A stretch of DNA of 64,000 nucleotides from assembly GCF_011386835.1 (NCBI RefSeq), contig NC_088799.1, forward strand, positions 58,280,001 to 58,344,000, in the 5' to 3' direction. Shown here piece by piece: positions 32,144 to 47,561 of this stretch. Positions within the stretch are counted from its first letter, which is position 1. Each line of letters opens with the position of its first letter. Under the pieces are notes generated by a model that was given only the letters and a program-made list of their open reading frames with translations, was not told the origin of the DNA and searched no databases. Origin of the DNA: Chrysemys picta bellii. Its lineage: Eukaryota. The translations under genes were made by a program, and so were the position numbers.

Positions 32144-32201
32144 CTTGCAAGCATTTCTGTATTTCACAGGCTTGTTTCTGGCAGGGATCCTTCTGGGGCA
32201 T
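32144..32201 (-). CDS. CMC4: CMC4 first coding exon (exon spans 32144-32211)
   Basis: ATG at 32201; MPQKDPCQKQACEIQKCLQ plus G|gtacca donor, phase 1; acceptor ttctag at 32212. Confidence 0.96.
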
Positions 32202-33119
32202 ATCCACAGAACTAGAATGATAGGAAAATGTTACTATACAAACAGTGGGGTTTGGGCAAGGCACTGCCTAAGACTTAGACCCTAGGGAGCTCACATTTTC
32301 CCTGCTCATATACCCTCCTCACAATGGACAATTGGATGGGTCCCCATTCAAAGCCAGTCTCATGCTGCTTTAGGGTCACTGTGAGACACACAAAGAATCC
32401 CTTATCCCCACAAGTTGACCACAGAGCCTTCCCCCCTTTCCTGTCCTCTATTGGCCCAGGGAGCAACAATGCTTTAAACACCCTAGGATATCACTGGGGA
32501 CAGCTAAAGTTAGGCAAGGAATGAAAAGTGGATGATGGGTATCTTGAAGGGTTCATCTTGTAAAACCCTGAAGATCTCTTCCTGGTCAAATCTAGTTCTT
32601 TTTCCATTTGGCAATTAGTGAACTCTCACCCACGCTGAATCTGAAGGATGCTTAAATGAACATGGTTGTTTTAGTTTAACAGTTCAATTCAGGTAGAGCT
32701 TATTATGCTCAAATATATTTTGATGTACCAACACTGCTGGGGGGGAGCGGCGCTGCTAGGGAAACAGCATTTGTCATAGAACTGCCTCTGGAGAGGAATT
32801 TATAAATAAAAGCATATTTCTGTGGTCCTAAAAAAGGATTACTTTTTTTAAGAAAACGTCTTGGCGATCAGTAGATTAAAACCTAGCAAAAAATGCAGCA
32901 GATGAGCCTATCAGACTCAAACCTTTTTAAGATAGGGTTTTTGACACACAATTTGACCTATCGTCATGACACTTTGAGATCAAAAGGAAAGCAGAGGTGG
33001 ATGGGTTTAGTAGTTGGATGGAAGACTCCAAAGAAAATGCAGATGCTGCAGGAAGTGGCGTTGGGGCATCATTCTTCCCTCTGAGCCACCATTAAGCCAA
33101 AGTTCCCACACAGTGCTAG

Positions 33120-40700: not shown

Positions 40701-41489
40701 CAGAGATGATGTGGCCTTTGGAAGAGTGGTGCTCCAATCAGTGGACGACTCCAACCTCACCTCCTGAATCTGGGCTTGAGAGTCATCTGATTGGGAATGG
40801 ACACGAACATGCACTTGAAGAAGAAAAAAAATGGTTACTCAACTTCTCGTAACTATTGTTCTTCAAGATGTGTTGTTCATATCCATTCCAATACCCACCC
40901 TTCTACCCCCGTCGGAGTAGCCGGCAAGAAGATACTGAGGGGGTGGCGCGTCGGCAGGGCTCTATATTAAGCGCCATGAAGGTGTGACTCCAGGGGGTGC
41001 CCAGACCGACCCAACAGATGCTGCTAAGGGAAAAATGTTCTGGCTACCATGCACATGTGCATGTACACACACCTGATTGGAATGGACGTGAACAACACAC
41101 CTCAAAGAACAACAGTTATGAGAAGGTGACTAACCGTTTTTTCTTGGTTCTATCTTAAGAATTAAGAACTAATCAGTGTAAGGTCTACCTGCTATAGACC
41201 AGAAGCAATATCCCAGTGAAATACAGTGATCTCATCCAGAAAACTTGTGGATGTACAAGGCAAACATTGCATGCAAGTAATCAAATCTGGGTACAAAAAC
41301 AGGAGGAGAGTTCAGGGAGAGAAAAAAATTATTACTTGCCTCAGTGCAATGTACATAGGGAAAATACACTCCCTTGCTATCCTATACACCTCGGACATAC
41401 CAAATAATCAATTGGAACACTGGCACTTCAAGGAAATCAGCACTGAAGTCATTCAACACAAGGCTTTCTGGAACGATCCGTAAAGGATA

Positions 41490-41937
41490 AGGTGACATTT
41501 CTATTGCACCATTCATTCTGGAAGATCCCAAAGTGCTTTACAGACTTGAATTGATTCTCAACTATACATAGGAGTCACTTTATCCAACACCGATATGTGG
41601 AAACCATCACTGTACACCTTAAGTGAGCGGAATGTAATTACCCAAGTTGGAATTTGGCCAGGATACTGCCCTACTCCATGGACTCCATAATGATCACGAA
41701 TGCTCAAGATCTTGATTTTATATGTCATTTGAAAGACAGAACTTCCAATAGCACAGTTCCCCCCAACACCACGTTGGGGCATCAGTTCAGTTCCGCACTG
41801 GCTGACACCTATTGGATCACCAATTCTACTTCCTAGAGCACCTAGGTTTTCCTTAGTGGTCTATCATCCAAGTACTGACCCAGTTTGATCTTGTTTAGCT
41901 AAATCTAACAGGATCACAGCACAGGGTGGTGTGACTA
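41490..41937 (-). repeat. AmnSINE1 copy with a 5S rRNA-derived head
   Basis: 41850-41937 is the reverse complement of a decayed 5S rRNA 5' region (CATCCAAGTACTGACC...CAGGGTGGTGTGAC). It is followed by Deu-domain-like sequence and a GTAAAGCACTTTGGGATC tail. Confidence 0.7.
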
Positions 41938-42479
41938 ACATCTCCCGCAAAGTCTACAAATACTATTAGATTATGGTTGGATTAGAAAAATACAGATGTA
42001 TATTTATTTGGTATGAATGTGGTGCTAGTGAAAGGTACAGCATGGGCAGCAGCTGTGCAAGTTTCCATTTTAGTCTGGGAGTGTAATGTAGTAAAATCTC
42101 ATTCTGTGGGCAAGTTAGTGACAGCGAAGTGCCAGTTGATTCATAAAAATCTACAGAATCATAATTTCAATGGTATCATCCTCTGCGACAGGCAGGAACT
42201 TGCATCTTTCTCCCCCCAGCTCCAGGTCCTCCGGTCGGTGGAAATTTTGATAACAGGGTAATGTTGGAAATGGGTTGAGATGGGTATCACTCGAAAGCCC
42301 TTTCTCTGACAAACATAATGGTATTCAACATGACAAACCAAGAACAATTATATTTGAGAAAATGCTTAAAAATCAACTTTAATTATACTTCAACTCAGGA
42401 ATGCAATGCATACATAAAAAAGACATTGATCTTTGGTAATCCTAGAGAAGTTAGCCTTGACTTGCAGGATTGAAAACAT

Positions 42480-44970
42480 TTATTCAGCAAAATCACCATC
42501 CAGGTCATCTCGGTCTAGGGCACCATTGCTAGACATGCTGTCACACTGATCCTTGTCCATGCCACTCTCGCACCTCTCCATACAAGACAGGCTGATGGCC
42601 AAACATTTACAGGGTGAGCATCTGATTAGCTGAAGGATTAATTCAGGAGTATATGGTATTTCACACATAACAAGACCCATCCATGTCCGATAGGGAGAAT
42701 TATTTTGGATGTGTTCAATCATCCTGGAGCCATTCCATTGCTTGATAATTTGCCCTTGTGTTAGCAGGTATAAATGCACCCCTTGTCAGTGGCAATTTTT
42801 CTCCATTTGTCTGCTTCTTGGAAAACATCCATCTATGTAGCTCTGCGAGTGTTGTCATGTTGGTCTTAAAATGATAAACTCAGCATATGAACGTCTCTAG
42901 TGCATTTATGACCTCATTAGTGACTGTCTCAGCCGTTCTGAGTACCTTAAGAGTGAGGAAAGTCTTTGGAGGTTGAATCAAATGCCTTCCAGTAAGATAA
43001 TTTGGTCTTTCCAGTCAACCTTCCATTGTGACATTGGAGAAGTTGTGGAGTCAATTATTTTGTATTGGACAATTGTAATACCATGGAGTCTCTTCTGCCT
43101 GGTAATATTTTTCATTGCTTTCTCTGCATACGTGTCAAATGCAAGATGGACTTCGTAATACATCCAGTATTTTCTCTGTAGCCTCATAATGAAGTGTTCA
43201 GCCAAATCGTGGCAGGTATTAACAGTTTCTGGTTTGTTGAGAGCATATACCTCAACCATAGCATCTATGATTGCTATGCTGAAAGGTCTCTGCTGGTATA
43301 AGGTCCTGGCCAAATTGTTAATAGGTGGTGGCTTAGGAACACAATGGAAGATGTGCATTAGTTTGCTTTTTGCCTGGTACATATGCATTGTTCTATCACA
43401 TTAAAACATCAATTGTGGTACCACTGAGAACTATTACATTTCCGAAGTCTCACATGCCAATATCATTTTGAGATCTGGACACAACCAGGAGAAGTGCAAA
43501 CAGTGTCCTATGTGGTTAACTCAGTCATCATCCCTGCCACCTTCACTCTGACTTTATCTCATATATAAAAGAGCACACCTTTAGTCTGTTCTTCTTGACT
43601 GGAGCCCATAGATTGAAAGAGCCTGGGATAATTCTTTGGGTTTTAAAGGTTTCATACAAATCATGACCAAAAGTATGCATTTGACTGACATCTTCAGCTA
43701 TCTCATCACTGAAGACTGCTTTTATCATAATATTAATGAGCTCCGGCCCAAACAGGTTGCCATCCTGGGGGATGGGGGCGGGAGGGACAGCTCAGTGGTT
43801 TGAACGTTGGCCTGCTAAACCCAGGGTTGTGAGTTCAATCCTTGAGGGGGCCACTTAGGGATCTGCGGCAAAATCAGTACTTGGTCCTGCTAGTGAAGGC
43901 AGGGGGCTGGACTCGATGACCTTTCAAGGTCCCTTCCAATTCTAAGAGATAGGATATCTCCATTTTTTATTATTATTATTATTTTTTAAATTGCCCCGTC
44001 TTGGCATTTAACTGCACCTAATTAATTTAGATGGTGCTTGTTTTTTTCTGGGGAAGTCATCCCAGCTATGCCAAATGTTTCATTCAAAACTTGATGGATG
44101 GAGTTCTGGATTTGTCAGGAAAAACTGTGAAAGAGCCTTTGGATACTGTGTTATGCCCACTCTACCCCCCTTCACTTTCCTTGCTCTGTTTTTATGTTCT
44201 AGGGCTTCATCTGAACCAAGTGCACAGAAGGGAGCTGACGGCCTTTTAACAACCCAATTTCCTTTTCAAAATTCCTCCATTTTTCTACACCTCTTATTTC
44301 AGGGAGGTACCAGGCAATCATCACAGTATAGCTGGTTAAATCTAAAGCAAAGAAGTATTTAACAAGGTCTTCCAGTGCTGTGAGGTACAAACGTCAATTA
44401 GCAGTCCTGACAGATCAAATAAAGAACAGCAAAGACTTGCCCACAGATGGCACTCATCCTGGCATCTTCAACATTTTCCTGGGTGCTTGATGTACTTTCT
44501 CTCCAGCCTTATGGGCACACTTCTTATAACCATGTGAGGTGCCACTGAAGCATTGTGTTTAGCCCAGTTCTCCACGGTGGTATTCTCCAAAGATGCAGTT
44601 ACTACATGGTACTCTATCTCCACACTAATGCCTAAAAATAATCAAGACCAAAGTAAAAACAAGGATTTCGTAATAAATTACTTTGGGATTGTAATTAAAT
44701 TATATAATGTATGTTATGTAACAATGTGCATACCATTTGCAGATGGATTCCAGTAATTTCTGACTCGATGCTGACATCTTAACCAGTGCCTCATTACAAC
44801 TCTTTTGGCATAAAAAACAAAGCCGATAATCAATACAACTGAACTGCTTCTTTTTTGCCGATGATGGCAAATCAACTCGAAGTACTCCTTCAATTTATAG
44901 TAATCTGTAACATCAAAAAAATTAATCAGGTATCCAGTTCTGGCATTAACTGATGACACAGCACTGTCAG
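42480..44970 (-). pseudogene. Decayed Academ-like transposase / XPG-like nuclease / CXC protein
   Basis: Fragments: FI*SVRTAN*RLYLTALEDLVKYFFALD; GNWVVKRPSAPFCALGSDEALEHKNR..KVKGGRVGIT; IIDAMVEV...VHLAFDTY..KAMKNITRQKR; LETFIC*VY...KKQTNGEKLPLTRGAF...RANYQ; LIRCSPCKC...CMERC. Confidence 0.75.
43780..43985 (+). mobile_element. Tortoise-type tRNA-derived Pol III/SINE inserted in the Academ element
   Basis: Box A/B head (AGCTCAGTGG...GAGTTCAATCC), CR1-derived tail (GGACTCGATGACCTTTCAAGGTCCCTTCC) and a (TAT)n end. Confidence 0.85.
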
Positions 44971-47561
44971 TCAAGGGCCATGATTTAGCTTTGTGAGGGC
45001 TGCATGTTTGACATGCCTGTGTTAAAGTATAATTTTTAAAAGTTGACTTTTAAACATTTTCTCTAATGTATAGCTACACAATTGTTCTAGGTTTGTCATG
45101 TTGGGTACCCTTGTGTTTGTGAAAGAAAGGGCTTTCAAATGATATCCAACTTAACCCATTTCTGATGACAATGTATTATCAAAAATTCCACCAACTGGAG
45201 GACCTGGAGCGGAGTGGGGTGGGGAGGGAGAGTGAGTCCCCCCCTACCATGCTTCAGAGGGTGACAGCATTGAAATTATGATCCTGTAGATTTTTATGAA
45301 ATCAAGTGACACCTCCCTTACCTTTCTGTCATTAATTTACCCATAGAATTGCACATGCTTCCAGACTATTTACTGACCCAGAAATGTGCTCCAACTCTGC
45401 CCTGAATTCCACAGGTGAATTCAGTCCCCATGGCCCACACAGTCCTGTCCCTCTTGTGTGAGGCTGCCAACAAGATTCCCAGTTAGTGACAGCTTGGTCT
45501 TGAGGACATGGAACTGGAGTAAGAAATATCTTTCTTTAAAAACAAAAAAGCTAACGCAGAAGAGAAACATGGATGTGATCTGAAAAAGTAAAGAGCAGGG
45601 AGATTCATATCTAAAACCTTGAGAATAACTTGAAGGGAGAAAACATACAAAACTCCTATTCTTGATTATACCGAGAAGGCAATCAAACCGCTTACAGGAA
45701 GCGGCAGCAGAAAGGAGACATAAGGTTACTTACTATTTATTTTACAATATAAGAACTGTTCCTTATTTTCTACACAATGTGGTTTGGCCCCATATTGTTC
45801 CACACTCTAAACAGAACCATTATTCAGCCTGAAATTTTCAGAATTAAAGAATCTATCATCATTGATCCTATGTCCTAATCAATATGTTTGCAGAGAGGAG
45901 TGCAGATGTTCAGCCCATCTCAGTATCAGGCCATTGAAGTTTAAAGGAGTTCTAGGACACCAGTGGCTTTCACGTATAGGCATGAAAATGGTTGGTAGGA
46001 GAGCTAGATCGTGTAATAAACATAATTTATTAGCTTTTAAGATTGATTCCTTGTAAATTATTTATTGTAAGATGAAGAAATTGTTCTAGCTGCATCTCAG
46101 ACAATTGCCAGAGCTACAGTTCATTGAGTGCTAAACAGTCTGTGCCCACGTGAAACATTTTGTAGTTGTTAATTGTACTAAATTGTATTTCAAGAAGGGG
46201 GTCAGGTCAGATTTTCAGAAGAGTTCAGCTACCATTTAGGTCCTTTAGTAAGTGGCCAGTTTTTCAAAAGTTTGCAGCATTCTGCACCTCCTATTATTTT
46301 CATCAGAATCTGTTTGGTGCTGATTTAAAAATATAGCCATTTCGTTTAGGCGCCTATATGGGAACTAAGCTCATCTGAAAATATAGCCCATCAACCCTAA
46401 ACCAGCCATACATGAAAAAGCCATGAGTCAGGTGAGCCATCCAGTATTTCAACACATTTAACCACTAATTTAACCACTCAACTCTACCTGGAGTACTTGC
46501 ATAGAGCAGAGGCCTCTGACAGACAGCTTTCCACTCTGCTCAAATTATTCAGGGATAGAAGAGGTTCATCATTCAGAGAGTTGAGCAGAAGTTAGGAATG
46601 GAAGATCTAGGTTTGATGGGATCAGATAAGAGGTAGGCAAATGGGGCACAGAAAGGAAAGAGCAAGGCAGAAATAGGGTACGGTAGCCAAGAAGCAGGAG
46701 AGGATGATCACAGGTAGATATAAAAGGGGAGGAGAAATTATGGCATTTGAAGGCAAAATATGTTGCAGATTCACTTGGCATTACTGGCCTCCCCCCATGC
46801 AGAACCATCCCCATCAATGCTTTCTGATCACTGTGCAGCCATTTACCAGCCCTTGGCCACCAGACTACTGGAGGGCATGAAGCTGAAGTCACAGTAAGCA
46901 TGCAATTCAGGTGCAAAAGGGCTTCACAAGGGGATCCAGTGGGGGACAGACCCTCTCAGGGTATAGCTCACTGATGCCCAAAGGCAATTGAACCCCTTCA
47001 CCGTGAGACTTTAAAATCTACCTTGAAACCTCTGCCAAATTAGAGTCTCCGCCTCCCCGCAAGTGAATGAGCCAGGGCTACGGGCATGGGGGCACTGCAT
47101 TCCAGGCGTGTCAGATGCAAGCCAGTTGCCCAGTCTTTGCCCACCCCTGTTTTGAGCGAGGTAGGGCATGATCCTCACCCAGCACCCTAGCTGCCAATGG
47201 CAAAGCTGCCCCTGACAGGGTACACTGCCCCCATTGTGCCCCGCTATCCCTGGCAGGAGTTATTGGGGGGGGTGCAGCCCCCAATGTCCCCAGGGGCCTG
47301 CAAGGCCTCTCCTTAGTCTCCCTCCCTGTTTTTCCCCCATGGGAGTGGGGGGAGCCGATCCCTCTGCACACTGGAGGGCGGGCCCCCACATTCGCCCCCG
47401 ACTTCCTGTGTTTCACTGAGACATCGGCTGCCTCCTTCCTAGAAATGGCCTAGCCGGGGGGGGGGGGGGGGGGGGGAGAGGGGGCAGCCAGCCCGGCCCC
47501 AGCGGGACACATGCAGCTGAGGAGACGCCCTGCCCTGCCCCGCCCCCTCCTAGTGACCTAC

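What the first reader, a model, noticed from the sequence alone, without database searches (positions are those of the whole stretch)
42071..45368. Academ-like DNA transposon with ~350-bp TIRs and a 3-bp TSD in an amniote intron
Seen: TAGTCTGG...CCAGACTA termini, TTT on both flanks, and long inverted repeats (~42071-42415 vs ~45000-45368, roughly 75-80% identical by eye). They enclose minus-strand fragments in the order: transposase core (YLTALEDLVKYFFA; DEALEHKNR..KVKGGRVGIT), XPG/PIN-like nuclease (IIDAM...AFDTY..K..TRQKR; EKLPLTRGAF..RANYQ), Cys-rich tail. Known: a DDE transposase fused to an XPG-like domain and a Cys finger, YR termini and 3-4 bp TSDs define AcademX. Inference: Academ is mainly described from invertebrates and aquatic vertebrates, so a bounded turtle copy may be an undescribed family or an old horizontal transfer. 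The ORF track shows only short fragments and would miss it.
Basis: partly seen in the sequence, partly recalled or inferred. Interest (0 to 1): 0.75.

Follow-up and report, generated by a model that had tools for sequence, protein, structure and literature searches.

The report
Decayed AcademX-type transposon in turtle
This is a dead, internally deleted copy of a cut-and-paste DNA transposon whose intact relatives encode one ~1,600-residue protein joining a DDE transposase to a flap-endonuclease (XPG/FEN)-type nuclease. It is a real, bounded and multi-copy element, but an ordinary genomic fossil with no sign of recent activity or horizontal transfer.

Summary
Window 42071-45368 is bounded by about 345-bp inverted repeats (85% identical over aligned bases; score 249 against 19.6±2.7 for shuffles). 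The termini are TAGTCTGG/CCAGACTA, with TTT on both flanks.

The minus-strand fragments match a family of about 1,600-aa proteins on 5.3-6.9 kb contigs:
- an N-terminal Cys motif;
- a DDE core (Pfam DUF6589; P-element transposase Z 9.2, Hermes 8.4, RAG1 7.0);
- a Rad2/XPG-fold nuclease (EXO1 Z 15.7, FEN1 14.2, XPG 12.8);
- a CXC tail.

The 40-bp terminal motif is conserved between both turtle ends and more than 25 element ends in metagenome contigs. Two further elements show exact 3-bp duplications (CAC, GTT). These traits fit AcademX, but no Academ reference protein could be compared directly.

- The copy lacks about 820 residues of the transposase, including both catalytic Asp motifs.
- It lacks about 148 residues of the nuclease.
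- It carries a SINE-like insertion.

The insertion is shared by at least four other coded organisms, and the family has tens of copies. Horizontal transfer and novelty could not be tested. An earlier unchecked note of this scan reports a similar relic elsewhere in this genome.

The parts
42068..42070 (.). Left copy of the 3-bp target-site duplication (TTT).
   Evidence: Read directly. The same arrangement (3 identical bases outside TAGTC...GACTA) is seen in L010 (CAC) and L042 (GTT).
42071..42414 (.). Terminal inverted repeat at the 3' end of the coding strand. It begins with the long form of the conserved terminal motif (TAGTCTGGGAG...GTAAAAT...TTCTGTGGG).
   Evidence: inverted-repeat alignment. 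(the terminal motif is shared with more than 25 element ends in metagenome loci).
42492..42671 (-). Remnant of the C-terminal Cys-rich (CXC/tesmin-like) tail, profile positions 1541-1607.
   Evidence: hmmsearch i-E 2e-09. tblastn to P0004 aa 1560-1619. Relative P0068 gives a sub-threshold Pfam TCR/CXC hit at 22.2 bits against a cutoff of 23.5.
42718..43027 (-). Remnant of the helical C-terminal part of the nuclease domain (contains EKLPLTRGAF..RANYQ), profile positions 1414-1517. It is broken by frame changes.
   Evidence: hmmsearch i-E 9.7e-18, 0.018 and 2.5e-4 for three pieces. tblastn.
43027..43041 (-). Junction of internal deletion 2. About 148 profile positions (1266-1413) are missing, including the conserved HEEAD, DTD and SGxD acidic motifs of the nuclease.
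   Evidence: Gap in the profile and tblastn mapping. Motifs located in alignment A3.
43041..43397 (-). Remnant of the N-terminal part of the XPG/FEN-type nuclease. It keeps the first two acidic motifs (IAIIDAM; LAFDTY...TRQKR), profile positions 1141-1265.
   Evidence: hmmsearch i-E 2.3e-33. phmmer found 268 relatives at E<=1e-3. The fold of relative P0026 matches EXO1 at Z 15.7, FEN1 14.2 and XPG 12.8.
43456..43749 (-). Remnant of the linker between transposase and nuclease (LFGPELINI...), profile positions 1023-1120.
   Evidence: hmmsearch i-E 4.4e-20 and 1.6e-3. tblastn.
43765..43990 (+). Secondary insertion of a very abundant SINE-like repeat with an A/T-rich tail. It interrupts the transposon between profile positions about 991 and 1023.
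   Evidence: The protein mapping leaves 231 bp for about 12 residues. Logan word depth is 10^5-10^6 here against 10^1-10^2 in the flanks in all four runs, and many contigs start at 43780 or end at 43938.
44098..44390 (-). Remnant of the C-terminal third of the DDE transposase core, including the motif that carries the presumed catalytic Glu (GSDEALEHKNR..KVKGGRVGIT), profile positions 868-970. It contains a frameshift near 44270.
   Evidence: hmmsearch i-E 1.8e-13 and 9e-25. 59-66% identity to several full-length relatives over this block. The motif is invariant in A2/A3.
44391..44735 (-). Site of internal deletion 1. About 820 profile positions (49-867) are missing, including both presumed catalytic Asp motifs (AADNxDFxED and TLDxGLY). 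The 345 bp present match no part of the protein profile.
   Evidence: No significant profile or tblastn match. Motif positions are from A3. Depth here is still 5-25 times single copy, so other copies share this stretch.
44736..44891 (-). Remnant of the protein's N-terminus with the Cys motif (FSCIDYRLCFLCQK), profile positions 2-48.
   Evidence: hmmsearch i-E 3.6e-09. tblastn to P0151 aa 1-51, 47% identity, E 4.6e-08.
45001..45368 (.). Terminal inverted repeat at the 5' end of the coding strand. It ends with the short form of the conserved terminal motif.
45369..45371 (.). Right copy of the 3-bp target-site duplication (TTT).
   Evidence: Read directly.

Best explanation
Window 42068-45371 holds one fixed, dead, non-autonomous copy of a cut-and-paste DNA transposon of the AcademX type.

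Intact relatives are 5.3-6.9 kb long. They have long, imperfect TIRs that start with TAGTC and a single ORF of about 1,600 aa with four parts:
- an N-terminal Cys-rich, presumably DNA-binding, region;
- an RNase-H-fold DDE transposase with a helical insertion domain;
- a complete Rad2/XPG/FEN-type 5' nuclease;
- a CXC Cys-rich tail.

Inferred mechanism: the DDE core binds the conserved ~40-bp terminal motif, cuts the transferred strands, and integrates with a 3-bp stagger, often at TTT/AAA. The fused FEN-type nuclease probably processes the other (5') strand or flap during excision or repair. This would be analogous to two-nuclease systems such as Tn7 TnsA/TnsB.

The turtle copy inserted at a TTT site. 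Either it or its source lost about 2.5 kb of the transposase and about 0.45 kb of the nuclease. It then accumulated stops and frameshifts and was hit by a SINE-like element. It cannot move on its own or encode any activity. Similar deleted copies occur tens of times per genome, so the deletion form probably spread using a full-length partner that is not in this window.
For: Shown:
- TIRs, termini and TTT flanks.
- Significant, collinear matches of the minus-strand pieces to about 1,600-aa relatives, with two large gaps.
- 27 relatives, mostly about 1,600 aa, on contigs of 5.3-6.6 kb.
- Nuclease half modelled at pLDDT 84. It aligns over its whole catalytic core to EXO1 (Z 15.7, 256-260 residues, rmsd 3.6), FEN1 (14.2), XPG (12.8), Rad2 (12.4) and T5 FEN (12.7). 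The five acidic clusters are invariant.
- The core half aligns to P element transposase (Z 9.2, 339 residues), Hermes (8.4), ISCth4 (8.2) and RAG1 (7.0). It also hits Pfam DUF6589 above cutoff in P0053 (35.5 bits against 27).
- The terminal motif is conserved in both turtle ends and in more than 25 ends of 75 related loci.
- Exact 3-bp TSDs in L010 (CAC) and L042 (GTT).
- The orthologous insertion is present in four other coded organisms, and depth and variant contigs show multiple copies.

From the literature:
- AcademX encodes a nuclease and makes 3-4 bp TSDs (PMC10045372).
- Curated Academ elements average 5,565 bp (PMC10294476).
Against: - No Academ reference protein or HMM could be compared, so the superfamily name rests on the combination of traits, not on tested homology.
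- Fold matches for the DDE core are moderate (Z 7-9). Foldseek alone gave only E 3e-3 to 4e-2.
- Three contigs of one related element (L001-L003) and L006 do not show matching 3-bp flanks. I attribute this to chimeric short-read assembly of a repeat (L012 shows such an artefact), but that is unproven.
- TTT is a common flank in this family, so the window's own TSD is weak evidence by itself.
- The role of the nuclease in transposition is pure inference.
- Copy number comes from Logan contig depth, which is only a rough guide.
Confidence: 0.8

Rival explanations
1. It is a genuine transposon relic, but of a separate, unnamed superfamily. In this reading a P/hAT/RAG-like DDE transposase independently fused to a FEN-type nuclease, and the family is not part of Academ as defined in Repbase.
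For: No direct comparison with Academ references was possible: the key papers are not held, and no held paper mentions both Academ and XPG. The nearest solved folds are the P element and hAT transposases. Pfam only calls the core DUF6589.
Against: AcademX is the only described eukaryotic superfamily with a nuclease-encoding transposase and 3-4 bp TSDs (PMC10045372). Element length matches curated Academ (PMC10294476). The DUF6589-type core is spread over Cnidaria, Arthropoda and Mucoromycota. DUF6589 is reported enriched in rust fungi (bioRxiv 10.1101/2025.10.24.684071), which mirrors the reported Academ distribution (PMC5751038). P and hAT make 7-8 bp TSDs, not 3.
Confidence: 0.1
2. The turtle family arrived by horizontal transfer from an invertebrate or fish, rather than descending vertically from an amniote-age Academ lineage. 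This concerns origin and is compatible with the best explanation.
For: Academ is reported as absent from lizard, frog and coelacanth repeat surveys (PMC4746887). The terminal 40 bp is strikingly similar to that of elements in metagenome contigs that probably derive from invertebrates.
Against: Protein identity to the closest full-length relatives is only 42-66% by block, so no near-identical donor is seen. The insertion is old enough to be shared by several organisms and to be heavily decayed. An amniote-age Academ fossil, found in turtle, is published (PMC9004415). No labelled vertebrate relatives were available for a tree.
Confidence: 0.07
3. It is not a mobile element but a decayed host gene, or a local inverted duplication that happens to flank unrelated ORF debris.
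For: Only short ORFs remain, and none has a Pfam hit of its own.
Against: The ends carry a motif shared with many independent elements elsewhere. The flanks are duplicated. The interior and the TIRs are multi-copy in several genomes. The coding remnants are collinear with a transposase-nuclease protein found on 5-7 kb TIR-bounded units.
Confidence: 0.02

Closest known systems
AcademX lineage of the Academ superfamily (Kapitonov & Jurka 2010; Kojima 2020, as cited in PMC10045372)
   Same: A single long protein combines a DDE transposase with an XPG-type nuclease. TSDs are 3 bp. Elements have TIRs. Full-length size is about 5.5-7 kb. Hosts are invertebrates, with relatives in fungi.
   Different: Homology to the reference Academ transposases was not tested here. 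The turtle copy is a 3.3-kb deletion derivative. The host is an amniote, where Academ has so far been reported only as a single weak protein fossil (PMC9004415).
AcademH lineage (helicase-encoding Academ)
   Same: Presumably the same transposase core family.
   Different: AcademH encodes a helicase and makes 9-10 bp TSDs (PMC10045372). Here no helicase domain was found in seven long relatives. L012 and L017 carry a single ORF of about 1,610-1,622 aa. TSDs are 3 bp.
P element, hAT (Hermes) and RAG1/Transib transposases
   Same: RNase-H-fold DDE core interrupted by a large helical insertion domain. These are the best structural matches (Z 9.2, 8.4 and 7.0).
   Different: There is no detectable sequence similarity (a profile search against PDB sequences found nothing). 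Those families make 7-8, 8 or 5 bp TSDs, have different termini and have no fused nuclease.
Rad2/XPG family 5' nucleases (EXO1, FEN1, XPG, GEN1) and phage T5 FEN
   Same: The whole catalytic core superposes (Z 12-15.7, about 250 residues, rmsd 3.6-4). The acidic clusters are conserved in the expected order.
   Different: Sequence identity is only 12-16% and no Pfam XPG hit is found. The domain is embedded in a transposase polyprotein and followed by a CXC Cys-rich tail. In the turtle copy the central third, with three of the five acidic clusters, is deleted.
Tn7 TnsA/TnsB (functional analogy only)
   Same: A DDE transposase works with a second, unrelated nuclease that could cut the other strand, giving full excision.
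   Different: No homology. In Tn7 the two are separate proteins. The analogy is my inference and is untested.

Membership tests
AcademX (Academ superfamily) | Transposase homologous to the reference Academ DDE transposases (Repbase Academ-1_SP, _NV, _DR and others; Yuan & Wessler 2011 profile) | not testable with these tools
   No Repbase or Dfam library is available, and Kojima 2020 and Yuan & Wessler 2011 are not held. Indirect evidence only: the core is Pfam DUF6589 and has a DDE-transposase fold.
AcademX (Academ superfamily) | Encodes an XPG-type nuclease fused to the transposase | tested here: met
   The family model matches EXO1 at Z 15.7, FEN1 at 14.2 and XPG at 12.8 over the whole core, with invariant acidic motifs. 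The window keeps the N-terminal part at i-E 2.3e-33.
AcademX (Academ superfamily) | 3-4 bp target-site duplications | tested here: met
   Window TTT/TTT, L010 CAC/CAC and L042 GTT/GTT. Caveat: L001-L003 and L006 contigs do not match, and assembly chimeras are suspected.
AcademX (Academ superfamily) | Terminal inverted repeats bounding the element | tested here: met
   About 345 bp in the window. 224-473 bp in L001-L003, L006 and L010. The terminal motif is conserved.
AcademX (Academ superfamily) | No helicase gene (this distinguishes it from AcademH) | tested here: met
   No helicase Pfam family in seven long relatives. L012 and L017 hold a single large ORF.
P / hAT superfamilies | 7-8 bp or 8 bp TSD; THAP or BED and hAT dimerisation domains | tested here: not met
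   TSD is 3 bp. No such Pfam domains were found in relatives. The similarity is at fold level only.
CMC (EnSpm/CACTA) and PIF/Harbinger (other superfamilies with 3-bp TSDs) | CACTA-type termini with Transposase_21-type protein; or a TWA target with DDE_Tnp_4 protein | tested here: not met
   Termini are TAGTC. The TSDs CAC and GTT are not TWA. No matching Pfam family was found in fragments or relatives.

The most novel reading that the evidence does not exclude
Turtles may carry the first bounded, amplified AcademX family described in a tetrapod. It would be a lineage that stayed active in the turtle line, spreading as a deletion derivative, long after Academ died out in other amniotes, or that re-entered by horizontal transfer. 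Its ~40-bp terminal recognition motif is conserved from invertebrate elements to a reptile. The family would also give Pfam DUF6589 its function, as the Academ transposase core.
Probability: 0.25. Interest if true: 0.55.

Novelty: new member of a known kind. Interest (0 to 1): 0.35.

Why it matters
For the genome itself it matters little. This is a silent fossil, probably in an intron of the CMC4/MTCP1 locus.

For transposon biology it gives four modest but concrete points:
- A well-bounded amniote example of a superfamily mostly known from invertebrates, fungi and fish.
- Fold-level evidence that the family's second domain is a complete Rad2/XPG/FEN nuclease, and that its core is a P/hAT/RAG-like DDE transposase.
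- A conserved terminal motif and a 3-bp, often TTT, target. Both could be used to annotate such elements.
- A likely functional label for Pfam DUF6589.

Curated repeat libraries may already hold this turtle family. I could not check that.

Tried and rejected
- Pfam on ten stop-free fragments gave no hits, even at E<=1.
- Rfam on 41000-46500 gave nothing.
- A word-index protein search with the 140-aa piece gave one 124-aa fragment only, because of the length filter.
- The profile of A1 against PDB sequences gave nothing meaningful.
The source contigs and organisms of P0001, P0004 and the others could therefore not be read.
With P0163 alone it found nothing. Alignment A3 then worked.
- Kojima 2020 and Yuan & Wessler 2011 are not held. 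Supplements of PMC5751038 and PMC9004415 had no usable Academ sequences. Literature searches for DUF6589/PF20231 gave no functional link.
- TIR-arm divergence (15%) was rejected as a clock. Related elements that are 99.8% identical between copies still have arms only 87% complementary.
- A 'TA' 2-bp TSD with GTC...GAC termini was considered. All copies fit it trivially, but it does not explain the exact CAC, GTT and TTT matches one step further out.
- ARAGORN found no tRNA in the inserted repeat.
- All searches used stop-free pieces or natural relatives.


Full report

Yes. The sequence reads ...CCATTT|TAGTCTGGGAG... at 42068-42081 and ...TTCCAGACTA|TTTACT... at 45359-45374. The repeat finder reports five collinear inverted-repeat blocks between 42140-42414 and 45001-45300, at 76-91% complementarity. 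A gapped local alignment of the two ends spans about 340 bp with 85% identity at aligned bases. Its score is 249, against 19.6±2.7 (maximum 32) for 200 shuffles.

**2. What do the coding remnants belong to?**

The ten longest stop-free pieces have no Pfam match. Because the family scans left the protein open, I ran the full HMMER search with the 140-aa piece (window 42981-43400, minus strand). It found 268 relatives at E<=1e-3, among them proteins of 1,607-1,636 aa. A second search with the core of P0004 returned 27 relatives, mostly about 1,600 aa. They lie on contigs of 5.3-6.6 kb and none is named.

tblastn of these proteins, and a profile built from nine of them, map the window copy collinearly:

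| Profile positions | Window coordinates |
|---|---|
| 2-48 | 44891-44736 |
| 868-970 | 44390-44098 |
| 1023-1120 | 43749-43456 |
| 1141-1265 | 43397-43041 |
| 1414-1517 | 43027-42718 |
| 1541-1607 | 42671-42492 |

Two blocks are absent. Positions 49-867 are replaced by 345 bp that match nothing in the profile. Positions 1266-1413 are collapsed to a junction of about 13 bp. It also has frameshifts and stops, and a 230-bp insertion at about 43765-43990.

**3. What is the protein?**

I used only natural relatives for modelling.

*Nuclease half.* The C-terminal half (P0026, with alignment A1) folds at pLDDT 84 and pTM 0.80.
- Every top Foldseek hit is a 5' nuclease of the FEN/XPG/XRN group.
- VIA-align gives EXO1 Z 15.7 (256-260 residues, rmsd 3.6), FEN1 14.2, XPG 12.8, Rad2 12.4, GEN1 12.1 and T5 FEN 12.7. 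These alignments cover the whole catalytic core.
- Five acidic clusters are invariant in the alignment: V-A-x-x-D-G-M, F-D-x-Y, H-E-E-A-D, D-T-D and S-G-x-D.

*Transposase half.* The N-terminal and central part (P0131, with alignment A2) folds at pLDDT 78.
- Foldseek gives weak hits, but they are all to DDE transposases: Hermes, P element and RAG1, at E 3e-3 to 4e-2.
- VIA-align gives P element transposase Z 9.2 (339 residues), Hermes 8.4, ISCth4 8.2 and RAG1 7.0 over model residues 181-730.
- Invariant motifs AADNxDFxED, TLDxGLY and GADEALExENR sit where the three catalytic residues of such a fold are expected. This placement is inferred from secondary-structure order, not proven.
- The same region hits Pfam DUF6589 above cutoff in P0053, and precomputed in P0159 and P0160. 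The ESM Atlas places it among DUF6589 clusters of Cnidaria, Arthropoda and Mucoromycota.

*What the turtle copy retains.* It keeps only the Glu-bearing motif of the transposase and the first two acidic motifs of the nuclease, so it cannot encode either activity.

**4. Ends and target sites across the family**

A metagenome scan with alignment A3 fetched 75 loci. Several hold whole elements with long imperfect TIRs: 466 bp in L001-L003, about 470 bp in L010 and about 260 bp in L006. A terminal motif, TAGTC-yr-GGAGCA-n-ATGT...(T/C)CCGTGGG, occurs at more than 25 independent element ends and at both turtle ends. This is strong evidence that the turtle TIRs are the true transposon ends and that the element belongs to this family.

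Both ends with both flanks were readable for seven units.
- The window shows TTT/TTT, L010 shows CAC/CAC, and L042 (inside a 22.7-kb contig) shows GTT/GTT. These are exact 3-bp duplications.
- L001-L003 are three assemblies of one element that is 99.8% identical between them. Neither they nor L006 show matching flanks.
- I attribute the mismatches to chimeric assembly of a repeat. L012 shows a clear artefact of this kind, with the same flank inverted on both sides. This explanation is an assumption.
- Eleven of 28 ends abut TTT or AAA, which suggests a target preference.

**5. Population and age**

Six coded organism labels hold at least half of the sampled words of the 4.5-kb stretch. I laid contigs from four of them on the stretch.
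- Contigs bridge the left junction in all four runs: 41634-42103 to 41634-42121, each with at least 33 bases inside the element.
- Contigs bridge the right junction in three runs: 45315-46000 twice and 45206-46000 once.
- No empty-site joint was among those listed.
- The insertion therefore predates the split of these organisms. They differ from the window by about 0-2% in the flanks. The SINE-like insertion is shared as well.

Word depth inside the element is 5-50 times that of the single-copy right flank. At single sites, 13-25 different contigs carry another base (for example 45103, 44766 and 42465). The family therefore has tens of copies at 88% identity or more, TIRs included. Depth stays elevated across both deletion junctions, so the deleted form itself seems to have been copied. 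This is an inference from contig depth.

TIR-arm divergence is not a usable clock, because near-identical young copies of a related element also have arms only 87% complementary.

**6. Comparison with what is known**

The literature held here supports these points:
- AcademX encodes a nuclease and makes 3-4 bp TSDs, whereas AcademH encodes a helicase and makes 9-10 bp TSDs (PMC10045372).
- Curated Academ elements average 5,565 bp (PMC10294476).
- Academ is widespread in fungi, most abundantly in Pucciniomycotina (PMC5751038).
- Academ is present in teleosts but was reported absent from lizard, frog and coelacanth (PMC4746887).
- One amniote-age Academ protein fossil was found through the turtle genome (PMC9004415).

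The traits tested here all fit AcademX: the fused XPG-type nuclease, the 3-bp TSD, the TIRs, the element size and the absence of a helicase. The one defining feature I could not test is direct homology to a reference Academ transposase. The key papers are not held, and no repeat-protein library is available. I therefore file the element as AcademX-type with 0.8 confidence.

**7. Context**

- A CMC4-like first coding exon (MPQKDPCQKQACEIQKCLQ) lies on the minus strand at about 32151-32210. I recognised it from my own knowledge of human CMC4.
- Earlier notes of this scan place MTCP1 exons at 33.5-34.2 kb.
- A GC-rich kilobase lies at 47-48 kb.

The element may therefore sit in intron 1 of a minus-strand CMC4/MTCP1 transcript, in the same orientation as the gene. 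The upstream exon was not located, so the 'intron' claim is plausible but not verified. Another first-reader note (s1-330077, unchecked) reports an Academ-like relic elsewhere in this genome. That agrees with a multi-copy family.

**8. Limits**

- Organisms of the sequencing runs are coded.
- No vertebrate relatives with taxon labels were available, so horizontal transfer and curated-library novelty remain untested.

**Verdict**

The feature is real and was correctly recognised in kind. It is a decayed, deletion-derived AcademX-type transposon fossil. It is a new member of a known kind at most, and of modest interest.

Noticed in passing
window 43765-43990 (+): A SINE-like repeat with an A/T-rich tail is inserted inside the transposon. 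Logan word depth is 10^5-10^6 in all four runs, and the repeat is shared by the orthologous copies. ARAGORN sees no tRNA in it.
   Followed up: partly
window 41500-41800: The left flank of the transposon has 10-25 times the single-copy depth in the laid runs, so another interspersed repeat lies there.
   Followed up: no
window 42071-42110 and 45330-45368; L001, L010, L042 ends: The two ends of the family differ by an ~11-bp block (CATAAAAT-like) between the TAGTC..ATGT and CCGTGGG boxes. In metagenome elements the long form is upstream of the ORF. In the turtle copy it is downstream.
   Followed up: partly
ends of 28 elements in L001-L071 and the window: The three bases outside the termini are TTT or AAA in 11 of 28 cases, which suggests a target preference for T/A triplets.
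   Followed up: partly
L012 1-586 and 8603-9188: Both flanks of this 8-kb element are the same sequence in inverted orientation (a 1,554-bp, 99% inverted repeat reaching the contig ends). This is most likely an assembly artefact, and it is a warning against reading TSDs from short-read contigs.
   Followed up: partly
window 32151-32210 (-): A reading frame begins MPQKDPCQKQACEIQKCLQ, which looks like the first coding exon of CMC4. The host gene would then run on the minus strand. A GC-rich kilobase (64% GC) at 47000-47999 could be its promoter or first exon.
   Followed up: no
proteins P0053, P0159, P0160, P0131: Pfam DUF6589 (PF20231) corresponds to the DDE transposase core of this transposon family. 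The DUF could probably be renamed.
   Followed up: partly
proteins P0175, P0008: Named fragments of relatives come from the crab Portunus trituberculatus and the click beetle Ignelater luminosus. One 1,173-aa relative (P0158) is filed under a bacterial MAG (Sedimenticola sp.), which is probably eukaryotic contamination of that bin.
   Followed up: no
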